A stretch of DNA of 64,000 nt from Convolutriloba macropyga (lineage: Eukaryota), in contig NC_134479.1 in assembly GCF_964194025.1 (NCBI RefSeq), forward strand, positions 12,896,001 to 12,960,000, in the 5' to 3' direction. Of this stretch, positions 6,001 to 59,009 are shown piece after piece. The notes under the pieces were generated by a model. That model searched no databases. It was not told where the DNA came from and was given only the letters and a program-made list of their open reading frames with translations. Positions within the stretch are counted from its first letter, which is position 1. Each line of letters begins with the position of its first letter. Position numbers and translations under genes: made by a program.

Positions 6001-6464
6001 TTCTGTTGAGCATGCACTCAATTTGTGTCCTTTAAAACCCGTAAGCGCTTATCCGTGCAATTTGAACACTCTAACGTTCAACCACTTTCTCTTAGGAGAA
6101 TACTCTACCGGTATTCCGTCTCTTGTCGGCAGCAATTTATTTGACCATCGTGAACGTTACGCCCGTGCGCAGTCGTGCGCTAATGCGATCTGGTCTCGTT
6201 GGTTCAGAGAGTACGTACCGACACTGAACCAACGCTCTAAATGGCAGACGCCTGCCGATCAACACATTAAGACCAGTGGCTTAGTTTGGATAGTTAAGGA
6301 AATCAACCCTGGGGGTTATTATTCTACCGCTCGGATCGTGGAACTCCGTTACGGCTCCGATATCGTCTCTCGCGCGCCGTTATACGTACGTCGACCGGTC
6401 CACTTGTCCGCCTGCTCGTAAAACTTGTACCAGTTTTCCCAACATCTTCCTCTGGACTGGAGGA
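1..6464 (+). mobile_element. Degenerate BEL/Pao LTR retrotransposon, internal gag-pol region (continues beyond the left edge; many stops and frameshifts)
   Basis: Fragmented ORFs occur in BEL order. Gag DUF1759-like WKLAQFNGNPLQW (~1580) and HNTLLH (~2425). Protease DTGCS (~2644). RT SLLTGPDLLQNL..ADIEG (3515-3660) and FYLDDYL (~3870). RNase H-like HMFGDS and ATKDNPAD (4400-4800). Integrase WSDNGTNF..GGIWERLV (5755-5925). DUF5641-like WFREYVPTLNQRSKW. Confidence 0.95.
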
Positions 6465-7898: not shown

Positions 7899-7998
7899 AT
7901 TCAGTTCATTTCTTTGCTATAAAATTGGCACGGAAACCTGTACCCGAGTAAACACCTTTATTGTTCCTTGAAATGTCCTAACTCTAACTTTTTTCCAG

Positions 7999-8418
7999 GG
8001 CCCGCTGAGGACAACGCTTTACTCGGTACTTATGTTGAAAACGAGCAATGGGAACTAATTCGTCCTGTGAAAATATCGGATCGCTCCGATTTCTGCGCCT
8101 TGAAAATATCTAACAGTTCTTTTTACGATAGCTCAACTGTCGTAACAATCCAACTAAGAAGGCGTCCTCTCTTTTACACCTTCATTTTAGTAATTCCGAA
8201 TGTTCTTCTTTATTTACTATCGACCTTAGTTTTCTTGTTGCCAGTCGATTCGGGCGAGAAGTTGTCGTTCATTGCGACTATTCTATTGGCTGAAACTGTC
8301 ACGGTCGGAACATTGAGTAGTATTTTACCTTCGAGTTCAATGAAAATTCCAGTTCTGCTTCAATTTGTGATTCTGATAGTGATTCATCTATCTCTTTTGT
8401 GTGCTGCGACGGCTGTGG
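7999..8418 (+). CDS. Internal exon of a Cys-loop ligand-gated cation channel (nAChR-like subunit): end of ECD, M1, M2, M3
   Basis: ttttccAG acceptor (7997-98) and GTAAGT donor (8419), phase 1 at both ends. Translation: YVENEQWEL...IQLRRRPLFYTFILVIPNVLLYLLSTLVFLLPVDSGEKLSF...ILPSSS..IP. These are the canonical RRPLFY, LP.DSGEK and M2-M3 loop motifs. Confidence 0.95.
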
Positions 8419-11953: not shown

Positions 11954-14205
11954 AACTAAAGAAAAATTATATTAGAAGGAGAGATAGCAATGGAGAAAAA
12001 ATTAGGTCGAAACTATGAAAAAACACAACGAAAAAAAAGACAGAGCAAAGAGATGAAAAAAGAGAAAAGATGAAAGAACAATGATTGCACGCTAGAGTGA
12101 CAAAAGATGAGAGAGCTATGGGTCAGTGAGAGGGATGAAGAGTGTTTGANNNNNNNNNNNNNNNNNNNNNNNNNNNNNNNNNNNNNNNNNNNNNNNNNNN
12201 NNNNNNNNNNNNNNNNNNNNNNNNNNNNNNNNNNNNNNNNNNNNNNNNNNNNNNNNNNNNNNNNNNNNNNNNNNNNNNNNNNNNNNNNNNNNNNNNNNNN
12301 NNNNNNNNNNNNNNNNNNNNNNNNNNNNNNNNNNNNNNNNNNNNNNNNNNNNNNNNNNNNGAGAGAAAAGAACAAAAGAAAAAACTATATTGGAAGGAGA
12401 GAAAAAATTAGGTCGAAACTATGAAAATAGAAAAAGAAGAGAGAGAGAGAGAGAGCAAAGAGATTAAAATAGAGAAAAGATGAGAGAACAATGAGTCAGC
12501 GAGAGGGAGGAAGAGTGTTTGAGAGTGTGTGTGTGANNNNNNNNNNNNNNNNNNNNNNNNNNNNNNNNNNNNNNNNNNNNNNNNNNNNNNNNNNNNNNNN
12601 NNNNNNNNNNNNNNNNNNNNNNNNNNNNNNNNNNNNNNNNNNNNNNNNNNNNNNNNNNNNNNNNNNNNNNNNNNNNNNTGTGCGTGTGAGATAGAGATAG
12701 CAGGAACGAAAGAGAGAAAACTATAGAGAGGGAAGGATTAGAGGGATCGAGAAAAAATGAGAGAAACGAAGGAATGATAGAGAAAAGTTGAGCATAAAAA
12801 AGATGAAAAAACACAGACACACTTACACAGAGAAAGAGCGAAATAGAGAAAAAAGCAGAGATAGAAAGATGAAAATGGAGGATAAAGAAATCATCTGAAC
12901 AAGAGAAAGGAAGAACGAGAAGGAGAGAGAATTGATTAGATCAAAATAAGGACAAGATAAACTGTTTGAAAAACGATAGAGGAAGGAGTGTGCAGCAGAG
13001 GTTGTGAGTGAGATGAGCGGAAAAAGGAGAAGAACAGGAAACACGAAATAGAGAAGAGGAAAACGGTTAAGGAAAGGTTAATATATCTCTCTCGCCACGC
13101 TCCCTCTCTGAGAGAGAGAGAGAACGACAAAAAATGAAAGAACAGAAAAAAATGAAAGAGAAAAAAAACGAAAATAACGAGATGTTCAGAAATAGAAAAA
13201 AGTTAACGAAAGAATCGAACGAAGAAGTGATCTCGATTTTTTAAAAGGAGTTTAAAAAAATCAGAGAGAAGCAGTGGGATTGGAAGATTATAAAACGCAA
13301 AAGATGAATGGGCACAAAAAATAAGGAACTTAAACGAATAGGCACTGTTACATTAATTGTTTTACACATTTTTTGAAAGCAAGCATCAGTAATCGATATT
13401 ACGAACAAACATTGGATTAAAATTTTTATCCAAAAATTTCAACAGGATTGAAAGTAACACTAAATAGAACATTGCCGAAGTTTTTCATAAAAGACCCCAC
13501 ATACACGCTTGCTCTCCCACATACAGACATACATACACACACATCACTCATATACACACATACAGACGCACTCACCCACAAACAACACAAGCTACCCAGA
13601 ACATTATTTCCTCCCCTTGGGCGAGCTGTTGGCACGACCGTACAGCCCTGAAGAAACTGTTGGCCTATTGACCCAGTTCCGATTCCCATCCAATTACAGT
13701 TCGCTTTTGTTCGTTTCAGGTCCCTGACCTCTCTAGTGTGTTTGTTTAACCATGCTGTTCAAAGCGGTTCTTAAACATGCACTTCAAGGGGCCCTTAAGC
13801 ATGCAAAAGTCTGACGCCTAAACATGCAAAAATTGGACGCTTAAACATGCATTTTTGGCCCTCGTTGAAGATGGTGCCTCATCATGTCTTTCGTTTAATA
13901 TATAGGAGGATTATGTAAGGTCTAGGCTAAACTCAACGCAAAAATACGTGAGATCTGCGCATAGTTCAACGCAAAATTACGTGAGATCTGCGCAAAATTT
14001 AACGCAAAATTATGTAAGGTCAACGCTAATTTCATCGATCTGCGCTTATAAACGCAGAATTATGTAAGAGTAGCGTTGAGAGCGTTGAACTTATCTGAGA
14101 TTTTCGCCTTAGTGAAATAATTGGAGCGCCTTTTACATAAATTCAACGTAATCACCGCCATTCTTACATATTGTTGCGTTTTTGGCGTTGACACCTCGGC
14201 CCGGA
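11369..14205. mobile_element. ~2.8 kb non-autonomous TIR element inside the channel intron, with an expanded simple-repeat interior
   Basis: TA|CCCGGGCCGAG at 11369 and CTCGGCCCGGA|TA ending at 14205. Subterminal arrays of tcaacgca/aaattatgtaag. Its ends match the opposite ends of the 15097-15911 element. Confidence 0.7.
11740..13260. repeat. GA-rich low-complexity/(GA)n,(GT)n microsatellite tract with two assembly gaps (N 12150-12360, 12537-12678)
   Basis: Direct reading. The unit ...aaaaattaggtcgaaactatgaaaa occurs on both sides of the first gap. Confidence 0.95.
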
Positions 14206-24200: not shown

Positions 24201-24577
24201 ATGGCAAACAGACCTGTGAGTGACAATTCAGCTAACACACAAAAACACAGTGATTACATTGCACCATCATATCAGCAGAACTTAGAAGCCCGAGTTCTTG
24301 GAAAAGATTCGGCTGATAAATCCGAACCGGGCAATGAAACATTTTGTATCGGTGGAAGCAAAATTTTGATATCCAGATGGTTATTCGTTCTTTCATATCT
24401 TACTTTTTGATTTCGGTTGTGCTTTTGATTGCAATTGTTATTGTATGCGCCGTTCACATTAACTCATTGGACTCCAAATAAATAAATTCTAACAATGATG
24501 TTGCAACTCTCAAACAAAGTGTTCGACAAACTCAAGAAGACTACTTATTGTCTCAGACTGCTATGACATTGAACAAG
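24201..24577 (+). pseudogene. Coiled-coil/LGG family paralog B, exon 1 copy 1 (1-nt deletion in TM, in-frame TAA 24479-81)
   Basis: Near-identical to 30734-31112. Homologous to 45590-45934 (DYLLSQTA vs DYLTSQSA). Ends in AAG|GTTTGA. Confidence 0.85.
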
Positions 24578-24747
24578 GTTTGATTCCAGTTTCCACTTTT
24601 CATTCTTTTGATGACATCTTGGCAGAGTTTATTCGATCCCAGTCCAAATCTGATGTCTGACAAGGTCACCAGGTGGGATTGAACAAAATACCAGGTTGGA
24701 TTGGACTCAATCATTGTCGTCGTCGTCATCATTGTCGTCGTCGTCAT

Positions 24748-25044
24748 CTTAGAAGCCCGATTCCCTGGAAAAGATTCGGCTGATAAATCCGAACCGGGCA
24801 CTAAAACATTTTGTATCAGTGGAAGCAAAATTTTGATATCCAGATGGTTATTCGTTGCTTTCATATCTTTTCTTTTATTTCAGTTGTGCTTTTGATTGCA
24901 ATTGTTTTTGTATGCGCCGTTCACATTAACTCATTGGACTCCAAATAAATAAATTCTAACAATGATGTTGCATTTCTCAGACAAAGTGTTCGACAAACTC
25001 AAGAAGACTACTTATTGTCTCAGACTGCTATGACATTGAACAAG
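24748..25044 (+). pseudogene. Paralog B exon 1 copy 2 (5'-truncated, 1-nt deletion, TAA 24946-48)
   Basis: Starts mid-exon at cttagaagcccga, fused to Gypsy sequence. Same 3' Gypsy junction as copy 1. Confidence 0.85.
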
Positions 25045-25050
25045 GTTTGA

Positions 25051-28753: not shown

Positions 28754-29132
28754 ATGGCAAACAGACCTGTGTGTGACAATTCAGCTAACACACAAAAACA
28801 GAGCGATTACATCGCACCATCATATCAGCAGAACTTAGAAGCCCGAGTTCCTGGAAAAGATTCGGCTGATAAATCCGAACCGGGCACTGAAATATTTTTG
28901 TATCAGTGGAAGCAAAATTTTGATATCCAGATGGTTATTCGTTGCTTTCATATCTTACTTTTTTATTTCGGTTGTGCTTTTGATTGCAATTGTTATTGTA
29001 TGCGCCGTTCACATTAACTCATTGGACTCCAAATAAATAAATTCTAACAATGATGTTGCAACTCTCAGACAAAGTTTTCGACAAACTCAAGAAGACTACT
29101 TATTGTCTCAGACTGCTACGACTTTGAACAAG
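28754..29132 (+). pseudogene. Paralog B exon 1 copy 3 (+1 T frameshift, TAA 29034-36)
   Basis: T5 instead of T4 before GTATC. The shifted frame reads CISGSKILISRWLFVAFISYFFISVVLLIAIVIVCAVHINSLDSK*INSNNDV...TTLNK. Confidence 0.85.
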
Positions 29133-30733
29133 GTTTGATTTTTAGTGATTTAAATTGATGAAATTTCAAATGCGAAACCAAAATTAGATGCTAAAAAATA
29201 CTCCATTTGACTCACATGGCTCTTACAAGTTAAGCATTCGACTTAAATTATTCGTTCTTGTGTAATTTCTTAGAATATATGTTGTTACAAAATAACAATT
29301 TTGCCCATATTTTAGCAGAAAACTTTAAAACCGTGCAACGTATGAATGAAAACGGATGTTTGAAAAATAGAATCTGGGAAAAAATAAATCGATTTCATAA
29401 AAATATTGATATAAAGAAAGAAAGGGTCATTAAATCACTTTGAGAAAAAGCTGACAGATAAATTTGAAACTTCAATCAGTGTTAAAAAGGGTAAAAAATA
29501 TTCGGAACATTTTTAAAAAGCAATATTGAAGAAGATAATTGAGAACCACTATTTATTTATTGAAATGCAAAAAGACTTATTGGGTTAATATAAATGAAAT
29601 ATAGTATTTTTTCAAATTAAGTCGCTTTGTTATTTTGTTATTCAAACTGAGCAACAAGCTCGCACGCCTTTTCTACGACAATATACTGAAAAATGAACTT
29701 AGTTAACCAATAAGAGTTGAACTCAATCGCAACGAACTTGCGAGAAAGTTACAAGTTGGCCATTCGGCTATCAATTTCCTGCAGTTTAACCAATCGACTT
29801 GCACTTTCTTACAAGTTAACCGTTTTTTGTAAGAAACGTGCAAACTCTTACAAGTTTACTATATTTTTGCAAGGAAATTGGAATTGCATACAAGTTAATC
29901 ATTCAGTCTCGACCAGATTAATTGTAAAACGTGGGCTGACAAAACCAATTTTGTTAAATTTGATTTCTCTGACGTTAGTCACCTAACGTGTCATGCAGAG
30001 AAATTCTGATTCAATTCGTAAAAATTTTCTACGAGCACGGGGGAAGTAACAGTAAGTTCGATAAGATTTCTATGAAATCAATTTGCCGTTATTAATCAAT
30101 AAAGAAACATAGTTTGATCAATCGTGTCTTCTTAGATCCAAATATGATCTATCCGTAAAAATTATATGAGAGCTTATTGGGGCAGTGGATCGAAGAAAAT
30201 TTGTTATCATTGTTTGTCAAAGCCTATTCAATGTTTAAATAGTATCATTTTTTTGTGAGGTTATCAATCGTTAACCAACAATATAAGCTTTGTTACTTTC
30301 GAGGAATGAGAAATTGCAGAACTGACAGTTTGAATTTTTGCGAAATGATTTTTTTAATCAAGATGTCACTCTTATTACCAAAAAAATTTTTGGCCCATCA
30401 AAAAATTTTCAAGCTGATAACGGTTCTGAATTAAGTTTTCTTTCCAATGAGGCAATTAACTGACTTGAAAGTATGCTGTTAGAAAATCTCAATGATTCTT
30501 ATGCAGCTCGAGACAAAAACAGTAGTTTTTGGTTGTTCGATTTTTTATTGAATATTTATATCACAAACAATCGATAGCTACTCATGTGATTATAGTTTTC
30601 TTATAGAGCTGCACGTCCTCAACTCAAAATATAAATTGCTTCTAGTTTAGTACATAAATGTTATTTTATATACAGCAAAATAACAACAATCATATTATTT
30701 TTTTCTTTGCTTTGATTGAAAAGATTTTAAAAT

Positions 30734-31112
30734 ATGGCAAACAGACCTGTGAGTGACAATTCAGCTAACACACAAAAACACAGTGATTACATTGCACCAT
30801 CATATCAGCAGAACTTAGAAACCCGAGTTCCTGGAAAAGATTCGGCTGATAAATCCGAACCGGGTACTGAAACATTTTTGTATCAGTGGAAGCAAAATTT
30901 TGATATCCAGATGGTTATTCGTTGCTTTCATATCTTACTTTTTTATTTCGGTTGTGCTTTTGATTGCAATTGTTATTGTATGCGCCGTTCACATTAACTC
31001 ATTGGACTCCAAATAAATAAATTCTAACAATGATGTTGCAACTCTCAGACAAAGTTTTCGACAAACTCAAGAAGACTACTTATTGTCTCAGACTGCTACG
31101 ACTTTGAACAAG
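30734..31112 (+). pseudogene. Paralog B exon 1 copy 4, nearest exon 2 (+1 T at 30875-79, TAA 31014-16)
   Basis: 379 nt = 126 codons + 1. The corrected translation aligns with 45590-45934 across the TM and coil. Phase-0 donor AAG|GTTTGA. Confidence 0.85.
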
Positions 31113-36116: not shown

Positions 36117-36389
36117 TTGAACGAGACTTCATTTAAACTCGACATATTCAATAATTCAATCTCAAGCCTTGAAGGTGACGTAGATTACTACACTGACGAG
36201 TTGATGAAGGCTGTGAACAGAACAGATCACCTGGACAGCGAGTTGATCTGGCTCAGTTTTGATTTAGACACTACATACCTAAGAGTTTCTTCAAACGCTG
36301 ATTCAATTGCCGAACTTTACATCAAAGAAATTGTTCTAAAAAGCCGCGTAGCGACTGCAGAATACCGTATATTAGCCTTGGGTGGCTGA
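36117..36389 (+). CDS. Paralog B exon 2 (90-aa coiled coil ending RILALGG*); open, but all its exon 1 copies are disabled
   Basis: tttcAG acceptor at 36115-16, phase 0. It is 273 nt, exactly like 48569-48841, and 18 of the last 29 residues are identical. Confidence 0.8.
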   Translation: MNETSFKLDIFNNSISSLEGDVDYYTDELMKAVNRTDHLDSELIWLSFDLDTTYLRVSSNADSIAELYIKEIVLKSRVATAEYRILALGG

Positions 36390-43720: not shown

Positions 43721-45589
43721 AACAATCAGAGAGATTCTCCGGTTTGTACAAAAAATTAGACCAATTTGTTAGGAAGCAAGTTAGTTTTTATTCAGGAAAA
43801 TTGGGCATTTTGCAAATAACAACTTTAAAAAATTAAAAGGGTCATTGATTTAATCAACTTAAATAAAATTTGAATTCTCCGTTACCGAAAGACTTCGAAT
43901 CTAACTCACACTGAATTTTTAATTATGTTCTTTTATATAAGAAAACTAGTTTTACATAATAACCTTAGCGCTTTTTGCGAAGATTATTTCTATTTAAGAA
44001 ATACACAGTTTCAACTGATCAATGAGTTCTTCAAAATAAACCAAACTCAAATGGGTGTTCCCCAATGTAGGCGGTTTTTAACAAAAAATAAGTTTTCAGA
44101 GCTTTTAGTGCAGTTTGCCCAGGAAGGAAAAACATTACTCTTAAGATTTTGGGCAAATTGATTTGTAAAAAAAAATTATCGAGTGACAGGTTGACGTATC
44201 TGTTACCTCTGGCTGATTGTTTTCTGAGTTGACAAACAAAGTAATCATAAGCTGATTCATGTACGTATACAAAGCGAAGAAAATGAACGAGTATTGAGTG
44301 TGCTATAGTTATTTCATTATTAAATGTTTAATGTGTGATACGCTCTAATCATCATTTGTTACGTTTTTTTAAAAAAAAATGGTTTTAAAAAATACGAAGT
44401 TAAGCAAAAAGTAATTTTACCCAGTTTGCACATAAAAAAATAGTTTTCCGGAATTTTGAACAAAAAAAAATTTGAAGAACGTAGTTCCATCGGATCAATT
44501 AGTAGTTCAAAAAGACCAAACTCGAAGGAATGTTCCGCAATATAATTGGTTTTTAACAAGAAAAATGAGTTTTGAGTCCAGTTTGCCCAGGAAAAAAAGG
44601 TTTTCCATGAAAATTTTTCGCAAAATATATTCTTATAAAAATTTTTTATCGAGTCATTAAGTTGGCGATTTGACGTATCTGTTGATTCTGGCTGATTTTT
44701 TTCCGAGTTAAAAAATAATCTTAAGCTAATTCAATTGAGTATACGAAACAAAAAATGAACAAAAAATGAGAGCGCTATTGTAATATTTTTGATTAAAAGA
44801 GTATTGTATGATACGCTCCAACCTGCCTTAAAACGTTCCAAAACTTTTGTACAATGCATACTGTGCGAACTTTTAGAATTTGTAAGATCTGCGCTTTTAA
44901 AGATCAAAATTAGGTAATTTCGAGGCATCGTAACGCCAAATTATTTCAGATGCACCACCGTTAGAGTTTCAGAATTATGTGAAATCTTCGATTAGAAACG
45001 CAAAATTAGCGTTGACAAGTTATAATACTTACAGCAATTTTCTTTTAAATTTTTGCGTTAAATGCGTTTAATTTACGACTTTAAAATAAAAATTTCAATG
45101 CACACTTATGCAAGAAAATTGCCTTAAAATTTATAAATTGTAAATGTCAGCGCTAGTTACCGTTTATCTTGAACAATTTTCTCAGCTTGCGTGTCTATGA
45201 AACCTTCATGGCAAATTTACTTTCTTGTCTGTAGATTAAACATATAGATATGAGCATATGCTTTACCACAAGAGCAAGTCAAAGTTTTTGTTGAATTTAT
45301 GCAGCGCGTATGTTTGCATAACAAGTAGTTTTGTATTTTTGACGAATATTTCACGAAAAATGACCAAGCAATATTCAACGAGCTCACAATACGCTGTTTT
45401 CAATGGCAGCTCAAAGTATGATTTTTTAGAGAAGAGTATAAAACGTCAATCAGCCGTGTTTTTTCTTTCGTTAATAAATTGGCTGGCATATACGTGGTCG
45501 TTTAGAAAATTTAAAACTATAACCATGCTCTATTGCTTTGTTAAAGACAGTTTAAAAGACAGTGCTCAATTTTTTACGCAAAAAAAACA

Positions 45590-45934
45590 ATGAGCAGCCC
45601 AGAAGGCAATAGTTACATTAAGCCAGCTCATCAACTATCAAACAAGCAGAATACGGAGACGTCAGAAAATGATGAGCGAAATCGAGACTTGAGAACAATT
45701 TGCTTTACTGGTGGCCAGGTAACCCTACCTAGTTGGTTATTCTTAGGTTTTGTAATCTATTTTATCATTTCTGCTGTAGCTTTAATTGCACTTTCTTCTG
45801 TCTGTGCATTTAAAATCAGATCGATAGACTCGAAAGTGAAGAACATCAACAACGAGGTCAAGGATTTGGATGAAATTGTTCGCGAAACACGAGAAGACTA
45901 CCTGACGTCTCAGAGTGCTACTACATTGAAAAAG
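45590..45934 (+). CDS. Gene A exon 1: single-pass membrane coiled-coil protein (N-terminal tail, TM, start of coil; 115 aa)
   Basis: aaacaATG start. No signal peptide. One hydrophobic span, WLFLGFVIYFIISAVALIALSSVCAF. Heptads IRSIDSKVKNINNEVKDLDEIV. Phase-0 donor AAG|GTTTGT at the same position as in paralog B. Confidence 0.85.
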
Positions 45935-48305
45935 GTTTGTCTTCGGCTAAACTTTTGAACAATTTGTTTTTTTGTTACAGAAATGGTACAAGTTCTGTAA
46001 CAACTTTGCAAGATTGCATTTTCCCCCATTGTGAACGAAAAGTTGAGTGCGGGTTGTTACCTCAGTAGCTCATATCATTACATCCTAACCAATAACCCGA
46101 AAATAGGTCTCTAATTTCTCGATTGATTGCATAGGCGGTTGAATTACTTTTTTCTTTCTCCGACCGTTGCAACGTCCAATAACAGTCAGACGGTTTTCAA
46201 ATACCAAAATTTGGTGTTGAAGTCCAAATTATATATTTTTTTAAATGATACCAATGATTTCTAGTGATACCTTAATTAATATTGACACTCATTTAAGGTA
46301 GATTTTATGGTCAAAACCTAAAATTAATTTATGGTCAAAACCAAATTCATGAATTAGTTTTTGTGATTCTCCATTCTCGTTTTTTCTTCATTTTGTAAGC
46401 GTTTTTTAAGTTTTTCCTTCTTTCTTAATTTAACTAACCAGGATCTGTACAACGTGTTTTTTTTAATATATACGAGTAGATTTATCATTGAAAGCAATTG
46501 TTCAATTGAAAACGCGACACATAGGAGCTAACAACTTTTTAACTTCTATAACTAAGCAAGAACTCATTTGATGTTTTCATACCGCATAAGCAGACTTGAG
46601 TTGCATTTGACTGATTCTGCTTTCGTGGAATCCTCAAAAAAATTCCCATTTTTGTGGAATTGCGCTAAGTTGTAAAATGCAATCTGGTTGCGATATCTAG
46701 TAACTAAACTCCACAAGTTAGTAGCAAATTCCACAATACCTGTTAATAATTTTAGACAACATGTTACTAATTATACAATTAATATCACTTAATTGTAATC
46801 GGATTAAATAACCGTCACTATTACTGGTTATTGAATTTGAGTTCAAAATAATAAAAAAGTGTCTTCTTCATTTGAATAATTTCAGCCGAGAAATATTTCG
46901 ACAAAAAATTTAGTTTAAATTTAGCTCCGCAATTAGTTCTGATAGAAAGTCAATGCATTATTTGCTCAAAAACCGAATTCAAGCTACGGGTTTTGTAGCC
47001 TGGATTCAGCAATTCTTAAATTTACTGGTTTTTTTTGGAGTCGGCTCCTAATTTCCTTTCCAAATAGCCTTGTTCTTAAATGTAACCCAATTCTGTAAAA
47101 TGTATGTACACATACATTTTTTGTATGAAATTTGTATGATCACCAGGAAATCATACAAATCATATATGACCTTGTATGATTACAAGGGATCATACATGTC
47201 CTGGTTTGAAATCTGTTAGAATATCGATCAAACTATAGTCTTAAACTTAGTGAGAATTAGAAAGAAAGTTTAACTTACCGGATTAGAAAGACAAAAGCCA
47301 ATTGATTTTAATCAGAGAATTTATATAAATGAACCGTCAAGAAATGGTGCTTAGAATCAATATTCGGTTCAAATTGGTGAATCTAGATAACTAATATTAG
47401 AGTGAGATTATTGGATGTAAATTCATCCCAGCGTGCATTAAATGATTATGATATCTCCGGAAGTGTGAATGAATTCTCAGAAAAGTGCAAATGCATTCCA
47501 TTTATGGTTCCCTTTGCGACTGATTTGCAGAAGCAAACCATATTGGGTAACCCTTGCGAACCCCACTGTAAATCATGGTGCTAAGATTAGTTTTGTATCT
47601 TTACTTTCTCGCACTGATATTGGGTATATATACAGCTGATTTCTGGGCCTTTTTTCATCCCCAAAATCAAATCACCATCTTGATCTAATAATCAGATCTC
47701 TCCTGTAAATCTCTAAATTCTACTGTAAAATATCATTAATGTTATTCTCTCATTGTGAGAAATTAATTTTTCTACTTAGTTAAAAACGCTTTTTATTCCG
47801 CTTGCGAAAACCCATAAACCAACAAAATTAAGGAAAGTTGTATGATGAGATAACCGGGTAAATCTCAGGCGACACACTGTTATGCTTGAATTTATCCATG
47901 TTTAATTTTTTATTCAATTTTCATGTTGATAGTTGCAACGTAATCAAAACGTTTCTCTTTAATTTTCGCAATTTACTCTATTTGTGAAAATAAAACCGCA
48001 ATTTTTGTCCGAAACATTGGCTTGGCTTATCTCAAAATAGGTGGCGATACCCTACAACAGTTGCTATTTTTCTCGTAGAACTTTGCATAACTGGAAACCA
48101 AAAGCGATGAAAACGCAAAAGTTGGAAAGAAGAGTATATATTGACATAGTCATGTCGGGACAAAATGTTGCAACCTCTGCCCCGGCATTTTAATTTTGTC
48201 CCATAATATACTCAATGGCAAGTAAACACCAAAAAACATGGCAAGGCATTTTATTACTGTGTTTTTTTCATACTGCTTTGTCTGCCACAGAATTGTAAAA
48301 ATGAA

Positions 48306-48471
48306 GGATCCTTTCCGTTTGTGCGTTCCGCAGTACGAATTATGCACCCCCTCCCCATTACAGAGCACGTGCTATTACATTGTAAAAAATTATGTAAAAT
48401 ATAGCACGTGTGTCTGGGGGTTGCCAACAATATGCAGCCACTAAACTGGGGGGCACAAACGGAAAAGATCC
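48306..48471. mobile_element. Small MITE in the gene A intron
   Basis: TIRs ggatcctttccgtttgtgc ... gcacaaacggaaaagatcc. Confidence 0.7.
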
Positions 48472-48568
48472 AATAAGAGAAGATTTAGCAAGAGAGATCT
48501 TCTAAGGAAGTGCATCTTCTAAGAAAGCGATGACAGATGAATGAATCTGCCATTTGCTGATTGTTTAG

Positions 48569-48841
48569 GTTAATGATGTGGAGATCATGTCTTTCAACGT
48601 CACAATAGAAGTCATGAATAACAACCATCAGCTCATCAATTTGACATCAAGCTTGACAGAGCTCAATGAAGAAATGAAAATCTTTCGTAATCAAACTGAG
48701 GAACTTGATTTCCATCTTTCAGAAGCTGGATATATTTTATCAGCTATTGAAGACAGTATTATAGACTTGTGTCAAAAAGAAGACGTGCTGAAAGGTCGTG
48801 TAGGGATAGCTGAAAATCGAATTACTCTTCTTGGTGGATGA
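48569..48841 (+). CDS. Gene A exon 2: 90-aa coiled coil ending RITLLGG* (spliced protein 205 aa)
   Basis: ctgat branch-like motif and tttAG acceptor (48567-68), in frame. Sequons NVT, NLT, NQT. AATAAA at 48897. Confidence 0.85.
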   Translation, partial: VNDVEIMSFNVTIEVMNNNHQLINLTSSLTELNEEMKIFRNQTEELDFHLSEAGYILSAIEDSIIDLCQKEDVLKGRVGIAENRITLLGG

Positions 48842-51800
48842 GTACAACGTCAATCCACGGAAACAATTTTATTAACTTTTCAGAGCATAGTTTAATAATA
48901 AAAAAGAAAATTGATCTCTTCGGTTTCTGTCAACATTTTTGACTATGCAAACAGTTTTCCTTGAAAGACGTTTGTCTGTCCCATTTGCAGCTAACATGCG
49001 TAAATTTAGTGAAAATATGGGAGCAGAACTTATTGGTAGTTGTGTTGTTTCTAATATCTAATTGTGAGCAATTCACACATCAAACGCATTCGAAGCAAAT
49101 TCTGATGAAGGAGTGACAGGAAGGAGAGCATTTCAATTTGAAATCATATCGTCAAATAAACAAAGTGAATACCAGGTGTAGTTGGAGTTGAAATTGTTAC
49201 AACTCCGATGATACTTATACATCTGCTTCTAATTGCTTTTGTTATCCGTGTGATGCGTGTCCAACGAGCTACAAATTTTGTGAACAGGGCCAAGTTTTTA
49301 AACAATGAATCATTTGTTCGCCTGGATTCACATTTTGCAAAAACTTTGCAAGATTTGAATCATTTTTTTTTTAATTTTCAAAAATGTAAATTTAAAGTTA
49401 TAACCACAACAAAAACGTTTGGTTAAATATTTACATTTTCAAAATCGCCTCGTATATATTTGAATAGTTTGGTTTTTACACTTCAGTAGAACAAATTTGT
49501 AAAGCCTCTTACTTGTCTATCTATTGGAACACGTTCATGCAGATTGACCATTTCGCTGCTTAGTTTTTCCTTAAATTTATTTTTAGTTTTCTCTTTTCGG
49601 ATTTCAATTGGCAAATTATTCCACTTCCTAGAAAAATTTCTAATCAGTGACCTGTCACTCTATTTGGATTGGCACTTATTCTTTGGAAAGTACTGGATAG
49701 TTCTAGAGATTTTGGTCAATTCGTACTTTTCAAAAATCCTGAATGAGGAGTTTTTGGTTTCTCGACTGCTCTCTTTATATTGTGAGAGGAGGTCAAAAAA
49801 TTTAAGAAGACAAACGTTTTTAATGAAAACTTTGCTGGTAAAATTTTGTCTTTCAATAATAGATCTCTTGCACTGTCAAACTTTTTGCGCAGATTTTGCA
49901 AGAATCTTGAATCATTTGAATCCCGCAATCACTATAGGTGAGGTTTTAATTCTCTCATTTTTGACCCATTGCAGATCATAAAAAGAGGCAAGTAAATTGC
50001 TCTGTCTAAAAAGTTGAAAACTTTAATGATTTCAATAATTGAGAAAGCATTTCATTTTTAAGCATTTTTAAGCAAATTTTATCTGATAGAAGAAGAAGCA
50101 ATAGAAAATAATTCATATACGGAAACCGTCTGCTTCACAAATACTTTTCTTATAAACGTTTCAGGAAAAAAATTCCTCAGATCTCATCCCTTTTTCCAAT
50201 TTTTCTATTTCTCAACACCGTTTTAAAGCTAGTAAATTTTTGAAGTCACTAAACTTTTTTCTGTAGCTTATATGATCTGTAAAAAAAGAACGCTGTAATT
50301 CTATCTGGTTTAAATCAAGTCAAATAAAATATCAAAGCCAGTGCGAGTTTATTGGACCCTGCTTTTGAAAATTACTGTAAAGTCTTATTGTTCTGACCCA
50401 CTTTAGTGGGGGGAGGAACTATGTACTCAAATGGGTTTTTTTTGTTGAGTCAAATTTGGCCGATCGATATGAACATTGTAGAGAGTTGAGAGTAGTATCA
50501 TTGGAAAGCCCTCCAGCGTAGAAAATAGAATTATTAAAATTTTTAAATACTTGTTTCATACAGGGAGTAAATGAGATTTTCATTTTTGTGAATAGTAGAT
50601 GGAATTTCGTTGTTTTTATTGAAATTTTCCGAATTTTTGACAAAATTTTTGCAAAACTTGCAAAAATAAGTTATAAATCATAACAATAGTACTATATGTT
50701 TAATCCCCAGAGATAGAGGAGGGTTGCTGAATTGTTCAATTCAAGTTTTGTTGGCTATATTTTGTGCTAAAATTTTCAAAACTCCGAATTTTTCGTTCAA
50801 AAAAGAGACCAAATAAGCATTTTTAGTCCCATCTCTCTAATCTTGCTTAAGGTAGACAACTAAAAATTGCGTGGATGTCCTTCGTATGATCAAAAAAGAG
50901 CTAGTTTTACTATCGCTGGCTTTAGGAGCTTCTGGAATTATAAGTTTTGCCAGTTTTTACAAATATAAACTCGATAATGTTTGAGAACAAATTGCTTTAT
51001 TTATTTTTGATACACTTGAAAATTTAGAATGAAAACTGATGTAATTAGCATCTCGAGCAATGGGGTGTTTTCTTTGAGGCGCAGAAAAATTGAGGTTGAT
51101 CTTGATCTCACAATGGATCCTTACTTTTCCAAATATTTAGGTTTTATTTGGGCGCGAACTTTTTTGAAAAATACCTCGGCATTCGCATTTTTTTGCATTA
51201 GCTACTGACAAGAATTTCAATTCAGGTCTAAAATTTTGACAGATAACATTTACAAAAACACCCGACATAACGAACATATTTTGGATTCATAGTTGAGCTC
51301 ATGGTTTTTTGGGATTTTATGACTTGCTTCCATTTGTTGAATTTTTTGCAGCCCAATGAAACAGTCCTGCCAATCATAGAACCAATTGGAATCTTTAAGT
51401 GCTATAAAAAAGCCTAGACAAACTTTTCAGATGTTATCTAATGTCTCTTAAGAGTTTGAAATTATTTGTTTCAAGAAAAGATCTGTAAGTTTTTGAACTT
51501 CGCCACTATTTTATCTTCTGGCGTAGTATGAGTAACGAAAAAAAACTTTCCTGTGAGTTTTAATATAAGGTTTGTAACGGTTTTTTTTACTAATGTTTTC
51601 CTGGTTTCGAAAGCCCGGGTTTTTTTAAAATTATTTTTAGTTAAAATTGCACTTTTTAGGGCCAATTTGTTTCTTTGTCGGACTGTCACTTCATTGAAAA
51701 GCCCCGTTGAACAAACGCACTGTAAGGAAAATGACCAGCGTTGAAAACAAAATGAATGTTTTCATAGCTTTTGTGGAATGGTTTTTGATTTGTGGGCTGA

Positions 51801-54994: not shown

Positions 54995-57839
54995 CTTGCA
55001 GACACTATTTCAGTCAACACCAATCTCAAATCTCGATGACAACGTTTTTTTGACAACGATTCCGACAGGGAGCCATCGCCATCCAGGGAGACATCGAAGC
55101 GATGTTTATGCAAATCGGAGTACGACAACAGGACCGACGTTATCTACGATTCATGTGGAGACAACCCAACAGCTCAGAATTAGAGGTGTACGAATACCAA
55201 CGACACATCTTTGGAGCCAGAGACTCACCAGCTTGCGCAAATTTTGTTTTGCAACAGACAGCCAAAGACGACATCGAAGATCACCCAAATTCTCTAGAGA
55301 TCATTCAGCGGACATTCTACATGGATGACATGGTTGCATCTTTCAGCGACGCCATCACAGCTTTCACTACAGCCAAGGATGTCAAGGATACTCTGAAGAA
55401 TGCTAAATTCAATCTGACAAAATGGTGCAGCAACAGCCGTGAGTTTTGTGAGCAGATGCAAGATGATCTCTGCAAACCAGTGGAGGAGCTCTTCAGTAAA
55501 GGTTTTCATCAAAGAGTACTTGGAGTTTACTGGAGCTTAGACGAAGACAAAATCATGTTCAAAGCGAAAGACAGAAGGAACCTGAACAGGAAAACTTGGA
55601 CCCAACGCAAGTTTCTCTCTTTCGTGTCAAGTTTCTATGATCCTTTGGGAATCATATCGCCATTCCTCATACGAGCCAAGATTCTACTGCAAGAGTTGTG
55701 GAAACATGGACGCGAATGGGACAAAGCTATCAGTGGAGACAATGGAAAGGCCATCAAAGACTGGGTACAGGAAACGGAACAGATATGTACAGTAGGGGTA
55801 AACAGGTTGGTAGGTGGTACAGCACTTGGGGACACAATGGAACTTCATGTATTCTGCGACGCATCATTGGAAGCAACCGCAGCAGTAGCATACATCAAGA
55901 CAACCAGGAACCAAGAAACCACAACTCGTTTTCTCATGGGAAAACAAGAGTGGCACCCTTACGTCAAACAACAATTCCCAGACTAGAACTGCAAGCAGCA
56001 CTTTACGCGGCAAGATTGAAGAAAACAATTGAGGATGAAATGGATTTCAAGTTTGACAAAATCTTTCTGTGGAGTGACAGCACGACTGTTCTCAGTTGGA
56101 TAAAGAACTTCAAATTGAAACACAAGATGTACATCGGAAACCGAATTGCCGAAATAAGGGATCTCACAAACACCAATCAGTGGAACTACGTCAACACCAA
56201 GGACAACCCAGCAGATCAAGGAACGAGGGGACTAACAGCAACAGAAATGACAGAAAAATCTCTTTGGTTACAGGGACCACAGTTTCTTCTATGTTCTAGC
56301 GACAACTCTACAACAGACTAACAACAACACGAAACTGTTTTCTTGAACAGCGCAGAACAGAGGCCTCAGGGAACAGGACGACAGCCAATTGACAAAGACC
56401 TAATTGATGCCAACAGGTTTAGCCAGTGGTTGAAACTAAGAGCCGTCATCATCAAAATGAAAAACCTCAGAAACAAAACGAGAACACGGGACCAGCAGAT
56501 CATAGATGCAGAGAACTTTCTTTTCCGTCTATCTCAACAACAATCATTCGACGAGGACATAAATCAACTAACACACAACAAGCCAATTCAAAAACGGAGT
56601 AGATTGATTCAGTTGACACCTTCAATAGACGAAGATGGTATCATTCGTTCAAATAGCAGACTAGCCAACGCACCAGTTTCAACAGCAACAAAGAAGCCAA
56701 TAATCTTAGACGGTAGAAACAGGATTATTCGTCTTTTTCTGGAACTGCAACACAACATCAATAGTCATGTTGGAGTTGAACAGCAAACACACACCATTCA
56801 GTTGAACTTTTGGGTTCTTCAATGCAAAACAGTAATGAAGAAGATCTCGAACAGATGCTACGAATGCACACGACAGAGACAACTCAACAGCCAGCCTCAG
56901 ATGTCAGATCTTCCGATCTACCGATTCTCAGTCAAACCTGTAGCCTTCAAGGAAGCCGGAGTAGACTTTTTTGGGCCATTTGAAATCTACAGCCAGATCA
57001 ACTTAGCCATGAAAGTATACTGTTGCTTATTCACCTGTCTGACGATACGAGCCGTTCATATCGAAGTCACCAGGAACTTGCAAAAAGAATCATGCATAAT
57101 GGCATTCCAACGATTCTTCAGCCGACGAGGACTACCGGAAAGAATTCACAGCGACAACGCTTTATATTTCACCAGTACAGCAAAGACCTTCGAAGAAAGC
57201 AGCTTCACAACTACAGAGATACAGAAATATGCGGAATCAAAAAAGATTGCATGGAAATTTATTCCACCAGGAGCTCCACATTTTGGTGGAACATAGGAAC
57301 GCCTCATTGGGATGAGCAAACGACTCTTCTTCAATATCGCCGGATCTAGGAAACTCCAGGAAGACAGTTTCTCAACCCTTATTTGCCAAGTCGAAGCTCT
57401 ACTCAACAGCAGACCTCTAACATCAGTCAGCAGTGACGTACGCGATGTGGAAAGCCTGACACCAGGACATTTTTTGACAGGAATGACAACAGGGCTGCCT
57501 TCAGATACTACAATTAGCAGCAACGACAGAGGAACAGGAAAACTATGGAAGAACGTCAACAGTATTATGAACGAGTTTTGGACACGTCTTTTAAAGGAAT
57601 ATCTGCCCACACTCAGACAACGTCGAAAATGGCATTCAACAGTAGACGGGATAGAAGTAGGGGACATGGTATGGATACTAGAAAACAACACACCCAGGGG
57701 TATTTGGCCGGTAGGTAGGGTACAGAAGGTAAATAAAGGTAAGGATAATGTGGTAAGGTCTTGCCTGGTTAAAACATCAAAAGGGGATTTTGTTAAACCA
57801 GCTATAAAACTTAGCTTGATCAGCGACAAATCAACATAA
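54995..57839 (+). mobile_element. Young, 5'-truncated BEL/Pao pol (RT, RNase H, integrase, DUF5641) with one frameshift (~55960) and two stops (56319, 57294)
   Basis: DIEAMFMQI, HIFGARDSP, FYMDD, YDPLG, HVFCDAS, TIPRLELQAA, WSDST, DNPAD, H..H..CYEC, GVDFFGP, HSDNA, PGAPHFGG, LNSRPL, LTPGHFL, EYLPTL. Confidence 0.97.
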
Positions 57840-59009
57840 AGGTTATCAAAAGCAAATGGAGAACAATAATTTAAGCACAATCTGAAGCAAACTTGATATC
57901 AGTTTTGGGATTAGACTAAAGTGAAAGATGAAAAATTTAAAGTTCAATTCAATGAATTAGCAATTCAAAGGGACTATTAGGTATTATTCAGGTACAATTA
58001 GGGATTTCAATAAGTAACTCACAAGGCAACTCAAATTAGCAAAGCTTATCGTACATTAGATAAATACATTCAAACGGGAAAATTTAGGTAGGTAGGTTTA
58101 ACAGGAAGACAAAATCTGGATAGACATTAGGTAGGTTTTGGAATTCAAATGCACAATTAATTAGCTTATTGCAAAACAGCAGAGAGTTGAACAGACAGGA
58201 TAAAAGTATGTTGAATAGTTATATGACACTAAACAGCTTAGGTAAAACCAGACATAGGTAAAACCAGACTTAGGTAAAAAATTATTACAAAACATTTGGT
58301 ATTCCGACAAACTCTAATTTGGGAAAAACAGGTAAACGTAGGCAATAGGTACAAGGTAGTGGTAGGTTTAGGTAGGTAGGGAACACGGGGAGCATCAGTT
58401 TTTCAACTCTCAAGGAGCAGACCAGCAACAACAACATTTCCGGAAATTGTTCAGTATTTGACAATCGCCAATCAGCCAATACAAAAGTTGATTCAAAACA
58501 ACTACAAATGTACACAGTTAAACGCAATCAGCACAAAAAGCAATTCAACTTTCCAGCATACCACTTTCATATAACACTACAAGCAGCACGTTGACAACCA
58601 GTACACAGCAACAATCTACAGACAACACCGACGGAAGACATCAGCAGAAATTTCACAACAACAAACACTTCAGCAAGAATTACTTCAGAAGAAGCAACAG
58701 CATTTTTTGAACAGCAGTCAACACATTCATCAACAGCAGACATTATCAAAGTCAGGACAGACAAACTTGTGGATATGGACGAGTCCATAACTTCAAGATC
58801 AGCGTTTTATTGAGGACACAACTCAATACAACATTTCAGCATAATCATCAGCAGATGAAGTAAGAAATACAGTTCAGCTACGCAAAAGACACAACAGAGC
58901 AAAAGAGAACACGATGAGACGACAAAGAGCAACTTCAAACAGACTTCAACAACAACAACAGATCGACCACAAACTTTCTGATTTTTGGTACCCAAAAATG
59001 GGGGCCCAG

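What the first reader, a model, noticed from the sequence alone, without database searches (positions are those of the whole stretch)
45590..48841. Unrecognised family of 'headless' single-pass coiled-coil membrane proteins
Seen: two exons splice in phase 0 into a 205-aa protein with a ~48-aa N-tail, one TM helix and ~130 aa of heptads carrying three NxS/T sequons. The protein stops right after RITLLGG. A paralog (30734-31112 + 36117-36389) has the same intron position, TM-flanking cysteines (TICF/TFCI, VCAF/VCAV) and C-terminus. Known: this resembles the TM and neck of class A scavenger receptors and C-type lectins, tetherin/BST2, and GOLM1-type Golgi proteins, but it has no collagen, SRCR, CTLD or TNF head and no GPI signal. 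RVGIAE/RVATAE resemble the RhxxhE trimerisation motif, with Ala at the second h. Inference: a lineage-specific, tandemly duplicating surface or luminal rod (~19 nm at 0.15 nm per residue) whose tip is functional, for example in recognition, tethering or defence.
Basis: partly seen in the sequence, partly recalled or inferred. Interest (0 to 1): 0.8.

Follow-up and report, generated by a model that had tools for sequence, protein, structure and literature searches.

The report
Acoel orphan family of membrane-anchored coiled-coil rods
This is a real, expressed two-exon gene of the acoel worm Convolutriloba macropyga for a small membrane-anchored, sugar-coated, probably three-stranded coiled-coil rod with no head domain; it belongs to an unnamed species- or lineage-restricted gene family whose function is still unknown.

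Summary
The main observation holds. Exons 45590-45934 and 48569-48841 join in phase 0 into a 205-aa protein. One 832-nt contig from an exon-only (RNA-like) run spans exactly that junction and ends at 45487 and 48952, so this transcript carries no head exon.

The "paralog" in the window is not an open gene. Its exon 1 (30734-31112) has a frameshift and an in-frame TAA, and three further relic copies share that TAA. Only the exon-2-like piece (36117-36389) is open.

The genome is Convolutriloba macropyga (acoel). The family gives about 34 exon-1 matches, 24 of them without stops. Most lie in one same-strand array on C12 (11.8-12.95 Mb). Two long members (747 and 822 aa open frames) also lack a head.

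No Pfam family and no homolog outside this species was found.

The 21-aa tip is identical in two distant paralogs although 14 of its 21 codons differ synonymously. It matches the RhxxhE trimerisation unit of solved trimeric fibres such as phage gp26. A three-copy model gives a parallel, in-register trimer (0.70 against a best control of 0.01).

Sequons are enriched on the C-terminal side and phased by heptads, which supports type II topology. The N-tail carries an invariant YxxP.

The tip therefore reads better as a folding and trimerisation nucleus than as a recognition head. This is a new family of a known architectural kind, of moderate interest.

The parts
45437..45443 (+). TATA-like box upstream of the transcript start
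   Evidence: The sequence TATAAAA lies 44-50 nt before the 5' end of the RNA contig at 45487. This is a consensus match only.
45487..45589 (+). 5' UTR. It contains a 22-codon uORF (ATG 45525) whose TGA stop (45591-45593) overlaps the main ATG.
   Evidence: The 832-nt contig of run X3 begins at 45487. The uORF was read from the sequence.
45590..45934 (+). Exon 1 coding part, 115 codons: N-tail, signal-anchor TM, membrane-proximal heptads and hinge motif.
   Evidence: Translation. GT donor at 45935. Covered by the RNA-like contig.
45614..45625 (+). Y-I-K-P (residues 9-12), the YxxP motif of the N-terminal tail.
   Evidence: Y9 and P12 are invariant in the 9-member exon-1 alignment A2, whose members are otherwise 19-41% identical. 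The motif is also present in the long members as VYSAP.
45734..45811 (+). Transmembrane signal-anchor, residues 49-74.
   Evidence: A 26-residue hydrophobic stretch. It aligns with the TM segment of all family members.
45893..45934 (+). Conserved non-heptad hinge EDYLTSQSATTLKK at the end of exon 1.
   Evidence: Heptad scan. The motif recurs in paralogs.
45935..48568 (+). Phase-0 GT-AG intron of 2634 nt, containing a high-copy repeat insertion at about 47213-47825.
   Evidence: The X3 contig skips it. The repeat shows very high depth in DNA runs and is absent from the other haplotype.
48569..48841 (+). Exon 2 coding part, 90 codons plus TGA: continuous coiled coil with three sequons.
   Evidence: Translation. 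RNA-like contig. The three-copy model shows a/d contacts from residue 4 to residue 88.
48776..48838 (+). Tip KEDVLKGRVGIAENRITLLGG. It includes RVGIAE (48797-48814), the RhxxhE unit in g-a-b-c-d-e register.
   Evidence: The 21 residues are identical in the C3496 member while 14 of 21 codons differ synonymously. It matches the gp26 repeat at E = 4e-8. R77-E82 contacts between chains appear in the model.
48842..48952 (+). 3' UTR with AATAAA at 48897-48902.
   Evidence: The X3 contig ends at 48952. Sequence read directly.
30734..31112 (+). Broken exon-1 relic of a paralog, with a frameshift and an in-frame TAA. Sister relics lie at 24389-24580, 24859-25047 and 28878-29135.
36117..36389 (+). Open exon-2-like piece of the paralog, 90 codons, ending RILALGG.
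   Evidence: No open exon-1 copy was found elsewhere in the window.

Best explanation
The locus is a compact two-exon gene of Convolutriloba macropyga. It has its own promoter region, a short uORF and a poly(A) signal, and it is transcribed and spliced as predicted.

Its 205-aa product is most likely a type II (N-in, C-out) single-pass membrane glycoprotein. The parts read as follows:
- The TM segment acts as a signal anchor.
- The roughly 130 residues after the TM form a parallel, in-register, probably three-stranded coiled coil. It is broken once by a conserved non-heptad hinge at the exon junction.
- N-glycans sit at outward-facing heptad positions.
- The chain ends two residues after the last core layer, so there is no globular head.
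- The highly conserved C-terminal unit (L-K-G-R-V-G-I-A-E-N-R-I-T-L-L) is a trimerisation and register-setting nucleus of the R-h-x-x-h-E type. This unit, rather than a ligand site, is what selection preserves.
- The middle of the rod is the variable, exposed surface.
- The short cytoplasmic tail carries a family-invariant YxxP motif. This probably docks a cytosolic sorting or SH2-type adaptor.

What is shown and what is inferred:
- Shown: gene structure, transcript, family and array, constraint on the tip, and motif identity.
- Inferred: topology, glycosylation, the trimeric state, the role of the tail motif, and any role at the cell surface such as glycocalyx spacer, adhesion or microbe/symbiont contact.
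For: - Splice junction and transcript ends: a single 832-nt contig in the exon-only run X3. The genome paper lists one poly(A) RNA-seq specimen among the three specimens of this project.
- ORF and motifs.
- Family size: about 34 exon-1 matches, 24 without stops, mostly same-strand on C12 between 11.8 and 12.95 Mb.
- Shared gene structure: every member checked has a 122-127 codon exon 1, a phase-0 donor and a 90-95 codon exon 2 that ends at the end of the coil.
- Tip: 21 of 21 residues identical with 14 codons differing synonymously, and an unalignable 3' UTR.
- Profile of exon 2 against 1.84 billion proteins: only own-species fragments plus phage tail-fibre (Gp58), YadA-stalk and Lpp-like repeats.
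- Profile of exon 2 against PDB: gp26 at E = 4e-8, then sigma-1, autotransporter stalks and LINE-1 ORF1p, all trimers.
- Three-copy model: score 0.70 against a best control of 0.01, partner pLDDT 89-90, runs agree in at least 98% of contacts. This mark was reached by 21 of 30 proteins solved as pairs of one chain and 0 of 23 solved as single chains. The calibration used two copies and microbial proteins, so it holds only roughly here.
- Sequons: 21 observed against 9.8 +/- 2.7 expected in seven exon 2s. The long member has 26 against 9.2 +/- 2.6, none in its 214-aa N side, with spacings that are mostly multiples of 7. N-tails have 3 against 6.0 expected.
- Y9 and P12 are invariant.
Against: - The positive-inside rule does not decide topology. 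K+R counts in the 15 flanking residues are 30 (N side) against 32 (C side) across nine members.
- The main protein's own three sequons are not significant (3 against 1.7).
- Members in the sequon test are related, so its p-value is optimistic.
- Only three copies were modelled, so a dimer or tetramer was not compared. Coiled coils can score high from memory of solved ones.
- The other haplotype changes 13 of the last 36 residues, including N to I inside the tip, so the tip is not immutable.
- There is one RNA sample and one contig. There are no read counts and no tissue information.
- There is no functional evidence of any kind.
Confidence: 0.6

Rival explanations
1. The tip is a recognition or binding site. 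On this reading the rod only presents the last ~20 residues and the free LLGG carboxy end to a ligand, such as a microbe, a symbiont or a partner receptor.
For: The tip is the most conserved part of the protein and is under strong purifying selection. The stop codon position is conserved.
Against: - The tip is one copy of a generic trimer-forming repeat found in phage fibres and bacterial adhesin stalks.
- Its conserved residues are the core a/d positions and the g/e salt-bridge positions.
- More distant subfamilies and the second long member end in different sequences.
- The other haplotype alters 13 of the last 36 residues but keeps R-h-x-x-h-E.
Confidence: 0.15
2. The orientation is reversed or the protein is internal. 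Either the coiled coil faces the cytosol (N-out, C-in), or the protein stays in the ER or Golgi lumen as a spacer or scaffold like CKAP4 or GOLM1. In either case it is not a cell-surface rod.
For: Flanking charges do not favour either orientation. There is no signal peptide. The main protein's own sequon count is not significant. Nothing here addresses the compartment.
Against: For the cytosolic version: sequons are about twofold or more enriched on the C side, phased by heptads, placed at outward positions, and depleted in the N-tails. The invariant YxxP lies in the N-tail. The luminal ER/Golgi version is not argued against by any result here.
Confidence: 0.15
3. The gene is an expressed but functionless young orphan in a decaying repeat-rich array. 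On this reading the open frame and transcript carry no selected function.
For: Many family copies are broken. The locus is full of repeats and local duplications. No homolog was found outside the species. NCBI's annotation appears not to include this gene, since no 205-aa entry turned up.
Against: - The tip protein sequence is perfectly conserved while synonymous sites are near saturation.
- Y, P and the gene structure are invariant across members at 19-41% identity.
- Both haplotypes keep the frame, the splice sites and the stop.
- Sequon enrichment implies selection on the product.
Confidence: 0.08

Closest known systems
Trimeric coiled coils with the R-h-x-x-h-E trimerisation motif (Kammerer et al. 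2005, from my own knowledge). Solved examples hit here: phage tail needle gp26 (4lin, 2poh, 3c9i), reovirus sigma-1, trimeric autotransporter stalks and LINE-1 ORF1p.
   Same: The C-terminal unit LKGRVGIAENRITLL aligns with the gp26 repeat LDGRVTTAENNISAL. R sits at g, V at a, A at d and E at e. A parallel in-register trimer is predicted.
   Different: The protein has one unit at the very end instead of a tandem array. It is an animal membrane protein, not a virion fibre or bacterial adhesin. The similarity is confined to a short coiled-coil motif, so it is best read as convergence and not as homology.
BST2/tetherin
   Same: A short N-terminal cytoplasmic tail with a tyrosine motif, one TM, a glycosylated extracellular parallel coiled coil, no globular head, and similar size (about 180-205 aa).
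   Different: There is no C-terminal hydrophobic GPI signal; the chain ends in GG. No match to any BST2 Pfam model appeared in the scans. Tetherin is a disulfide-linked dimer, whereas here a trimer motif is present. BST2 is known from vertebrates.
Class A scavenger receptors and collectin / C-type lectin necks (SR-A, MARCO, COLEC12)
   Same: Type II orientation and a trimeric alpha-helical coiled-coil stalk with N-glycans.
   Different: There is no collagen Gly-X-Y run, no SRCR and no CTLD in the protein or the transcript. A published survey found no class A scavenger receptor architecture in xenacoelomorphs (PMC12849515).
PLVAP, CKAP4/CLIMP-63, GOLM1/GOLIM4 (type II proteins whose luminal or extracellular part is essentially a coiled-coil rod)
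   Same: Headless type II rods that act as spacers, diaphragms or scaffolds. This is a possible functional analogy.
   Different: No sequence match in Pfam. Those proteins are larger and belong to different lineages. Their oligomeric states differ.
Polymorphic clusters of single-pass transmembrane genes in the snail Biomphalaria (GRC, PTC2)
   Same: Clusters of small (166-530 codon) single-pass TM genes with no known domains, a TM displaced from the N-terminus, low identity among paralogs, haplotypes with multi-kb indels, and no homologs outside the lineage (PMC7494358). Here the two haplotypes also differ by an 8-kb indel and a replaced tip.
   Different: Different phylum. Homology was not tested and is not expected. 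There is no phenotype link here. The genome-wide heterozygosity of this acoel is already 3.65%, so divergence at this locus is only about twofold above background.

Membership tests
Class A scavenger receptor | Collagenous Gly-X-Y domain after the coiled coil | tested here: not met
   The protein ends at RITLLGG and the transcript contig ends in the 3' UTR. There is no Gly-X-Y run.
Class A scavenger receptor | SRCR or CTLD head (in most members) | tested here: not met
   The Pfam scan of both exons gave no domain hit.
BST2/tetherin | C-terminal GPI-attachment signal (hydrophobic tail after the omega site) | tested here: not met
   The last residues are polar or small and the stop follows GG.
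BST2/tetherin | Sequence match to the BST2 family model | tested here: not met
   No such Pfam hit at E up to 10.
R-h-x-x-h-E trimeric coiled coil | The motif is present with R at g, hydrophobic residues at a and d, and E at e | tested here: met
   RVGIAE has R192 = g, V193 = a, A196 = d and E197 = e, both by the heptad scan and by the model contacts.
R-h-x-x-h-E trimeric coiled coil | Forms a parallel three-stranded coil | tested here: inconclusive
   The three-copy model scored 0.70 against a best control of 0.01, in register. Two and four copies were not modelled, and there is no experiment.
Phage tail-needle gp26 / Gp58-type fibre | Tandem array of the 14-residue repeat plus virion-attachment domains | tested here: not met
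   Only the last unit matches. There are no other fibre domains.
PLVAP / GOLM1 / CKAP4 | Match to the family profile | tested here: not met
   Both exons and the long member gave only generic coiled-coil matches.
The new family itself (C. macropyga LOC142357643-like) | N-tail YxxP, one TM, a phase-0 intron after the hinge, and a coiled coil that ends the protein | tested here: met
   Alignments A1 and A2, gene structures and the long members. The tip is identical to that of P0032.

The most novel reading that the evidence does not exclude
The family is an acoel-specific, fast-diversifying set of headless trimeric surface receptors. Their variable, glycan-studded rods bind microbial or algal-symbiont ligands. 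Their invariant cytoplasmic YxxP tyrosine motif signals through SH2-type adaptors. On this reading the family is a home-grown recognition system in an animal lineage reported to lack the conserved immune signalling pathways (PMC12849515). Alleles would be kept divergent by selection, as in the snail TM1 clusters.
Probability: 0.1. Interest if true: 0.75.

Novelty: new variant of a known kind. Interest (0 to 1): 0.4.

Why it matters
Acoels are a key lineage for early bilaterian evolution and their genomes are barely annotated. This gene appears to be missing from the public protein set, since no 205-aa entry was found. Its named relative is only 'uncharacterized'.

The family is a clean natural example of a minimal membrane-anchored, glycosylated coiled coil whose C-terminal unit is held fixed while the rod and its length vary. 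Lengths run from 205 aa to over 600 aa, and there is a shorter annotated isoform of one long member.

If the rods sit on the cell surface, they are candidates for glycocalyx structure, adhesion or host-microbe/symbiont contact in a photosymbiotic animal. If not, the finding still adds a defined orphan family and a corrected gene model. Nothing here shows a function, so the value for now is descriptive.

Tried and rejected
- **Pfam on both exons, the paralog exon 2 and the long member:** only sub-threshold or generic coiled-coil hits.
- **ESM Atlas feature search of exon 2:** best score 0.78, no lead.
- **Word-indexed search of 5.8 billion proteins with exon 1:** the frame was extended upstream so that 205-aa proteins were in the length range. 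The only hit was the unspliced 122-aa ORF from the other haplotype.
- **Same database with the long member, and with P0032 residues 300-446:** only P0032 itself. The first of these hit the 8000-candidate ceiling.
- **Exhaustive profile search with exon 2:** no eukaryote-like relatives beyond two own-species fragments. The other 28 hits are repeat-driven matches to prokaryotic or phage coiled coils, which I do not read as homologs.
- **AlphaFold2 of P0032:290-446 without an alignment:** two long helices with a break, pLDDT 74.8, pTM 0.40. This was uninformative beyond helicity, so I ran no fold search on it.
- **Positive-inside rule:** undecided.
- **Donor of the other haplotype's tip in the primary assembly:** none found; only repeat fragments of the 3' flank matched. 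'Gene conversion from a paralog' is therefore not shown.
- **Second RNA-run search:** only the same single study.
- **Two papers on C. macropyga immunity and symbiosis:** neither mentions such proteins.
- **Rejected ideas:**
  - A variant genetic code as the explanation for the TAA in the relics. The family's own stops are TGA and TAA.
  - A weak GT inside GGTGGATGA as a hidden donor to a collagen or head exon. The RNA contig runs straight through it into the 3' UTR.
Full report
**1. What is in the sequence**

An ATG at 45590 opens a 115-codon exon that ends AAAAAG|GT at 45934/45935. An acceptor (tttag|G) ends at 48568 and opens a 90-codon exon that stops at TGA 48839-48841. Joined in phase 0 they give 205 aa.

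The protein has these parts:
- a 48-residue hydrophilic N-tail;
- a 26-residue hydrophobic segment (residues 49-74);
- 131 further residues ending RITLLGG;
- three NxS/T sequons at residues 125, 139 and 156.

A simple heptad scan gives strong a/d periodicity at about 75-104 and, without a break, at 128-205. The two stretches are separated by a non-heptad stretch (EDYLTSQSATTLKK and the first residues of exon 2) that straddles the intron.

**2. Is it a gene?**

Four public runs of one study hold the exons. Three of them cover the whole 5.7 kb evenly and are DNA-like. The fourth, X3, covers only the exons plus scattered repeats.

In X3 a single 832-nt contig lies on 45487-45932 and 48567-48952. 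This is the predicted junction, with the usual 2-base AG/AG ambiguity (table 8). The contig ends in the 5' and 3' flanks of the ORF, so this transcript has no further coding exon.

The genome paper lists exactly three specimens for this project: HiFi, Hi-C and poly(A) directional RNA-seq of a whole animal. X3 therefore fits the RNA specimen by its behaviour, although its record does not say so.

Other features of the transcript unit:
- A TATAAAA lies at 45437-45443.
- An AATAAA lies at 48897-48902.
- A 22-codon uORF starts at 45525. Its stop overlaps the main ATG as ATGA.

**3. The 'paralog' in the window**

The interval 30734-31112 is 379 nt long and cannot be read as one frame. The N-tail is in frame 0 and the TM and neck are in frame 1. 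A TAA replaces the codon after DSK.

The same TAA sits in three further copies (24389-24580, 24859-25047, 28878-29135). These lie in a 1980-bp and a 467-bp local tandem duplication. They are dead copies that were duplicated after the nonsense change.

The exon-2-like piece 36117-36389 is open and ends RILALGG. No open exon-1 copy for it to pair with was found elsewhere in the window.

An intact close relative lies about 195 kb upstream. It has 127 + 90 aa and a 649-nt phase-0 intron.

**4. Organism and family**

The long-member search returned an NCBI entry, 'uncharacterized protein LOC142357643 isoform X3 [Convolutriloba macropyga]'. The genome size, 1,175.98 Mb in 4,694 scaffolds, matches the published assembly of that acoel.

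A profile of nine exon 1s finds 34 places in the genome at E <= 0.01, 24 of them without stops.
- Most are on C12 between 11.82 and 12.95 Mb, and all but one of those are on the + strand.
- Smaller groups lie on C9, C4, C3, C1 and on unplaced contigs.

Every member examined has:
- a 122-127 codon exon 1 ending in phase 0 at a GT (one at a GC);
- a 90-95 codon exon 2 that stops at the end of the coil.

The ends read LLGG, ALGG, ALRA, NLLGI or NWLWI.

Two long members have the same plan on a larger scale. They are C3496 (747-aa open frame) and C6 (822-aa open frame). Each has:
- a long Gly/Ser/Lys-rich N side carrying VYSAP;
- one TM;
- 400 or more residues of sequon-rich repeats;
- no head.

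The annotated isoform X3 of the C3496 gene skips the repeat block, so rod length may also vary by splicing.

**5. What is conserved**

In the exon-1 alignment, at 19-41% identity, the invariant residues are the start Met, Y9, P12 and one TM leucine. This amounts to a YxxP motif in the N-tail.

The last 21 residues are identical between this gene and the C3496 member. Yet 14 of the 21 codons differ at synonymous sites, the stop codons differ, and the 3' UTRs do not align (14 of 60 bases match). That pattern indicates old divergence with strong purifying selection, not recent gene conversion.

**6. What the tip is**

A profile of five exon 2s was searched against 1.84 billion representative proteins. 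It found two own-species fragments. The other hits were long proteins with many short matched stretches. Those examined carry Gp58 (phage tail fibre), YadA-stalk, Lpp and similar coiled-coil models, and show repeats of the form LxGRVxxAExxIxxL.

Against PDB sequences the best hit is a phage tail needle gp26 (4lin, E = 4e-8). It aligns ...LKGRVGIAENRITaL... with ...LDGRVTTAENNISAL.... Next come other gp26 entries, reovirus sigma-1, trimeric autotransporter stalks and LINE-1 ORF1p. From my own knowledge, all of these are parallel trimers.

In this protein R192, V193, A196 and E197 fall on g, a, d and e. This is the register of the published R-h-x-x-h-E trimerisation motif, which I cite from my own knowledge.

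A three-copy model of exon 2 gave the following:
- a parallel, in-register bundle with a/d contacts from residue 4 to residue 88;
- R77-E82 contacts between chains;
- a score of 0.70 against a best control of 0.01, a partner pLDDT of 89-90, and at least 98% contact agreement between runs.

This mark was reached by 21 of 30 proteins solved as pairs of one chain and by 0 of 23 solved as single chains. The tool warns that the calibration used two copies and microbial proteins, and that coiled coils may pass from memory. The result supports self-association. It does not discriminate a trimer from a dimer.

**7. Topology**

Flanking charges are uninformative: 30 K/R on the N side against 32 on the C side across nine members.

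Sequons are informative:
- Seven exon 2s carry 21 sequons against 9.8 +/- 2.7 in shuffles.
- The long member carries 26 against 9.2 +/- 2.6 on the C side and none in its 214-residue N side. Their spacings are mostly multiples of 7.
- The N-tails carry 3 against 6.0 expected.
- In the main protein the three sequon Asn residues fall on c, c and f, which are outward positions.

This argues that the C side is exposed to the glycosylation machinery, which means type II topology. Because the sequences are related, the shuffle p-values are optimistic. The topology is inferred and not shown.

**8. The other haplotype**

An 81.5-kb ENA contig is colinear with the window at 88-95% identity.
- It keeps the ORF, both splice sites and the stop.
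- It has an 8-kb insertion in the intron and lacks the window's repeat at 47213-47825.
- Exon 1 differs at 5 amino acids and 5 synonymous sites.
- The first 54 codons of exon 2 differ at 2.
- The last 36 codons differ at 13 amino acids, with many multi-base changes, and the 3' flank is unrelated.
- Two of its variants (48579 T>C, 48636 T>A) appear in the DNA runs (table 3).

No donor for this alternative tip was found in the primary assembly, so its origin is open. Genome-wide heterozygosity is already 3.65%, so the background divergence here is high but not extraordinary.

**9. Reading**

The simplest account is a minimal type II, N-glycosylated, self-associating (probably trimeric) coiled-coil rod.
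- Its C-terminal unit is conserved because it nucleates the coil and sets its register.
- Its middle is free to vary.
- Its short tail carries a conserved YxxP docking motif.

The length estimate of about 19 nm is an upper bound, since the hinge may bend. Whether the rod is at the cell surface or in an internal lumen, and what it does there, is not addressed by any result here. Surface spacer, adhesion or microbe/symbiont contact is my preferred guess, at low confidence.

**10. Comparison and novelty**

In architecture it is closest to tetherin, to PLVAP/CKAP4/GOLM1-type rods and to the stalks of class A scavenger receptors. It fails the defining features of each: GPI signal, collagen/SRCR/CTLD, and family profiles.

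Its tip shares a motif with viral and bacterial trimeric fibres, which I read as convergence.

As a gene cluster it recalls the snail polymorphic TM1 clusters, by analogy only.

It is a new family of a known architectural kind. It is real and tidy, and it has no known function.

Noticed in passing
window 45525-45593: A 22-codon upstream ORF lies inside the mapped 5' UTR. Its TGA overlaps the main start codon (ATGA). This arrangement fits termination-reinitiation control.
   Followed up: no
window 47213-47825 and 48431-48473 (inside the intron); also 49357-49900: These are very high-copy repeats, with k-mer depth of 10^4 to 4x10^5 in the DNA runs. The 47213-47825 element is absent from the other haplotype, so it is a polymorphic insertion.
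   Followed up: partly
L038/L037 (ENA contig ctg31528_57x_l), between the two exons: The other haplotype has an 8-kb insertion in the intron that carries a 558-aa called gene. The gene was not identified.
   Followed up: no
window 55102-57880 (+) and 5687-6421 (+): Pieces of a BEL/Pao LTR retroelement pol gene are present: RVT_1, Peptidase_A17, integrase and DUF5641. The frames are split over several ORFs.
   Followed up: partly
window 7968-8426 (+): An open frame matches the transmembrane region of neurotransmitter-gated (Cys-loop) ion channels (Pfam E = 1e-9). It is probably an exon of a neighbouring gene.
   Followed up: no
G000:C6, about 46.9-49.4 kb (L039, minus strand): This is a second long family member with an 822-aa open frame. 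Its N-terminal region is very similar to that of the C3496 member. Its ectodomain repeats are unrelated (about 35 residues each, each with sequons) and its end is different (IEADIALLQSQP).
   Followed up: partly
L036 (G000:C3496) 1277-3520 (-) versus P0032: NCBI isoform X3 (446 aa) removes the central repeat block from what is otherwise a continuous 747-aa open frame. Stalk length may therefore be varied by splicing within an open frame.
   Followed up: no
P0002 (92-aa own-species fragment): This is a variant of the 36117-36389 exon. It ends ...RVVAAEDLY instead of ...RVATAEYRILALGG, so the tip is lost. This fits decay of that paralog.
   Followed up: no
window 12150-12360 and 12537-12678: Two runs of N (211 and 142 bases). 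They were left as they are.
   Followed up: no
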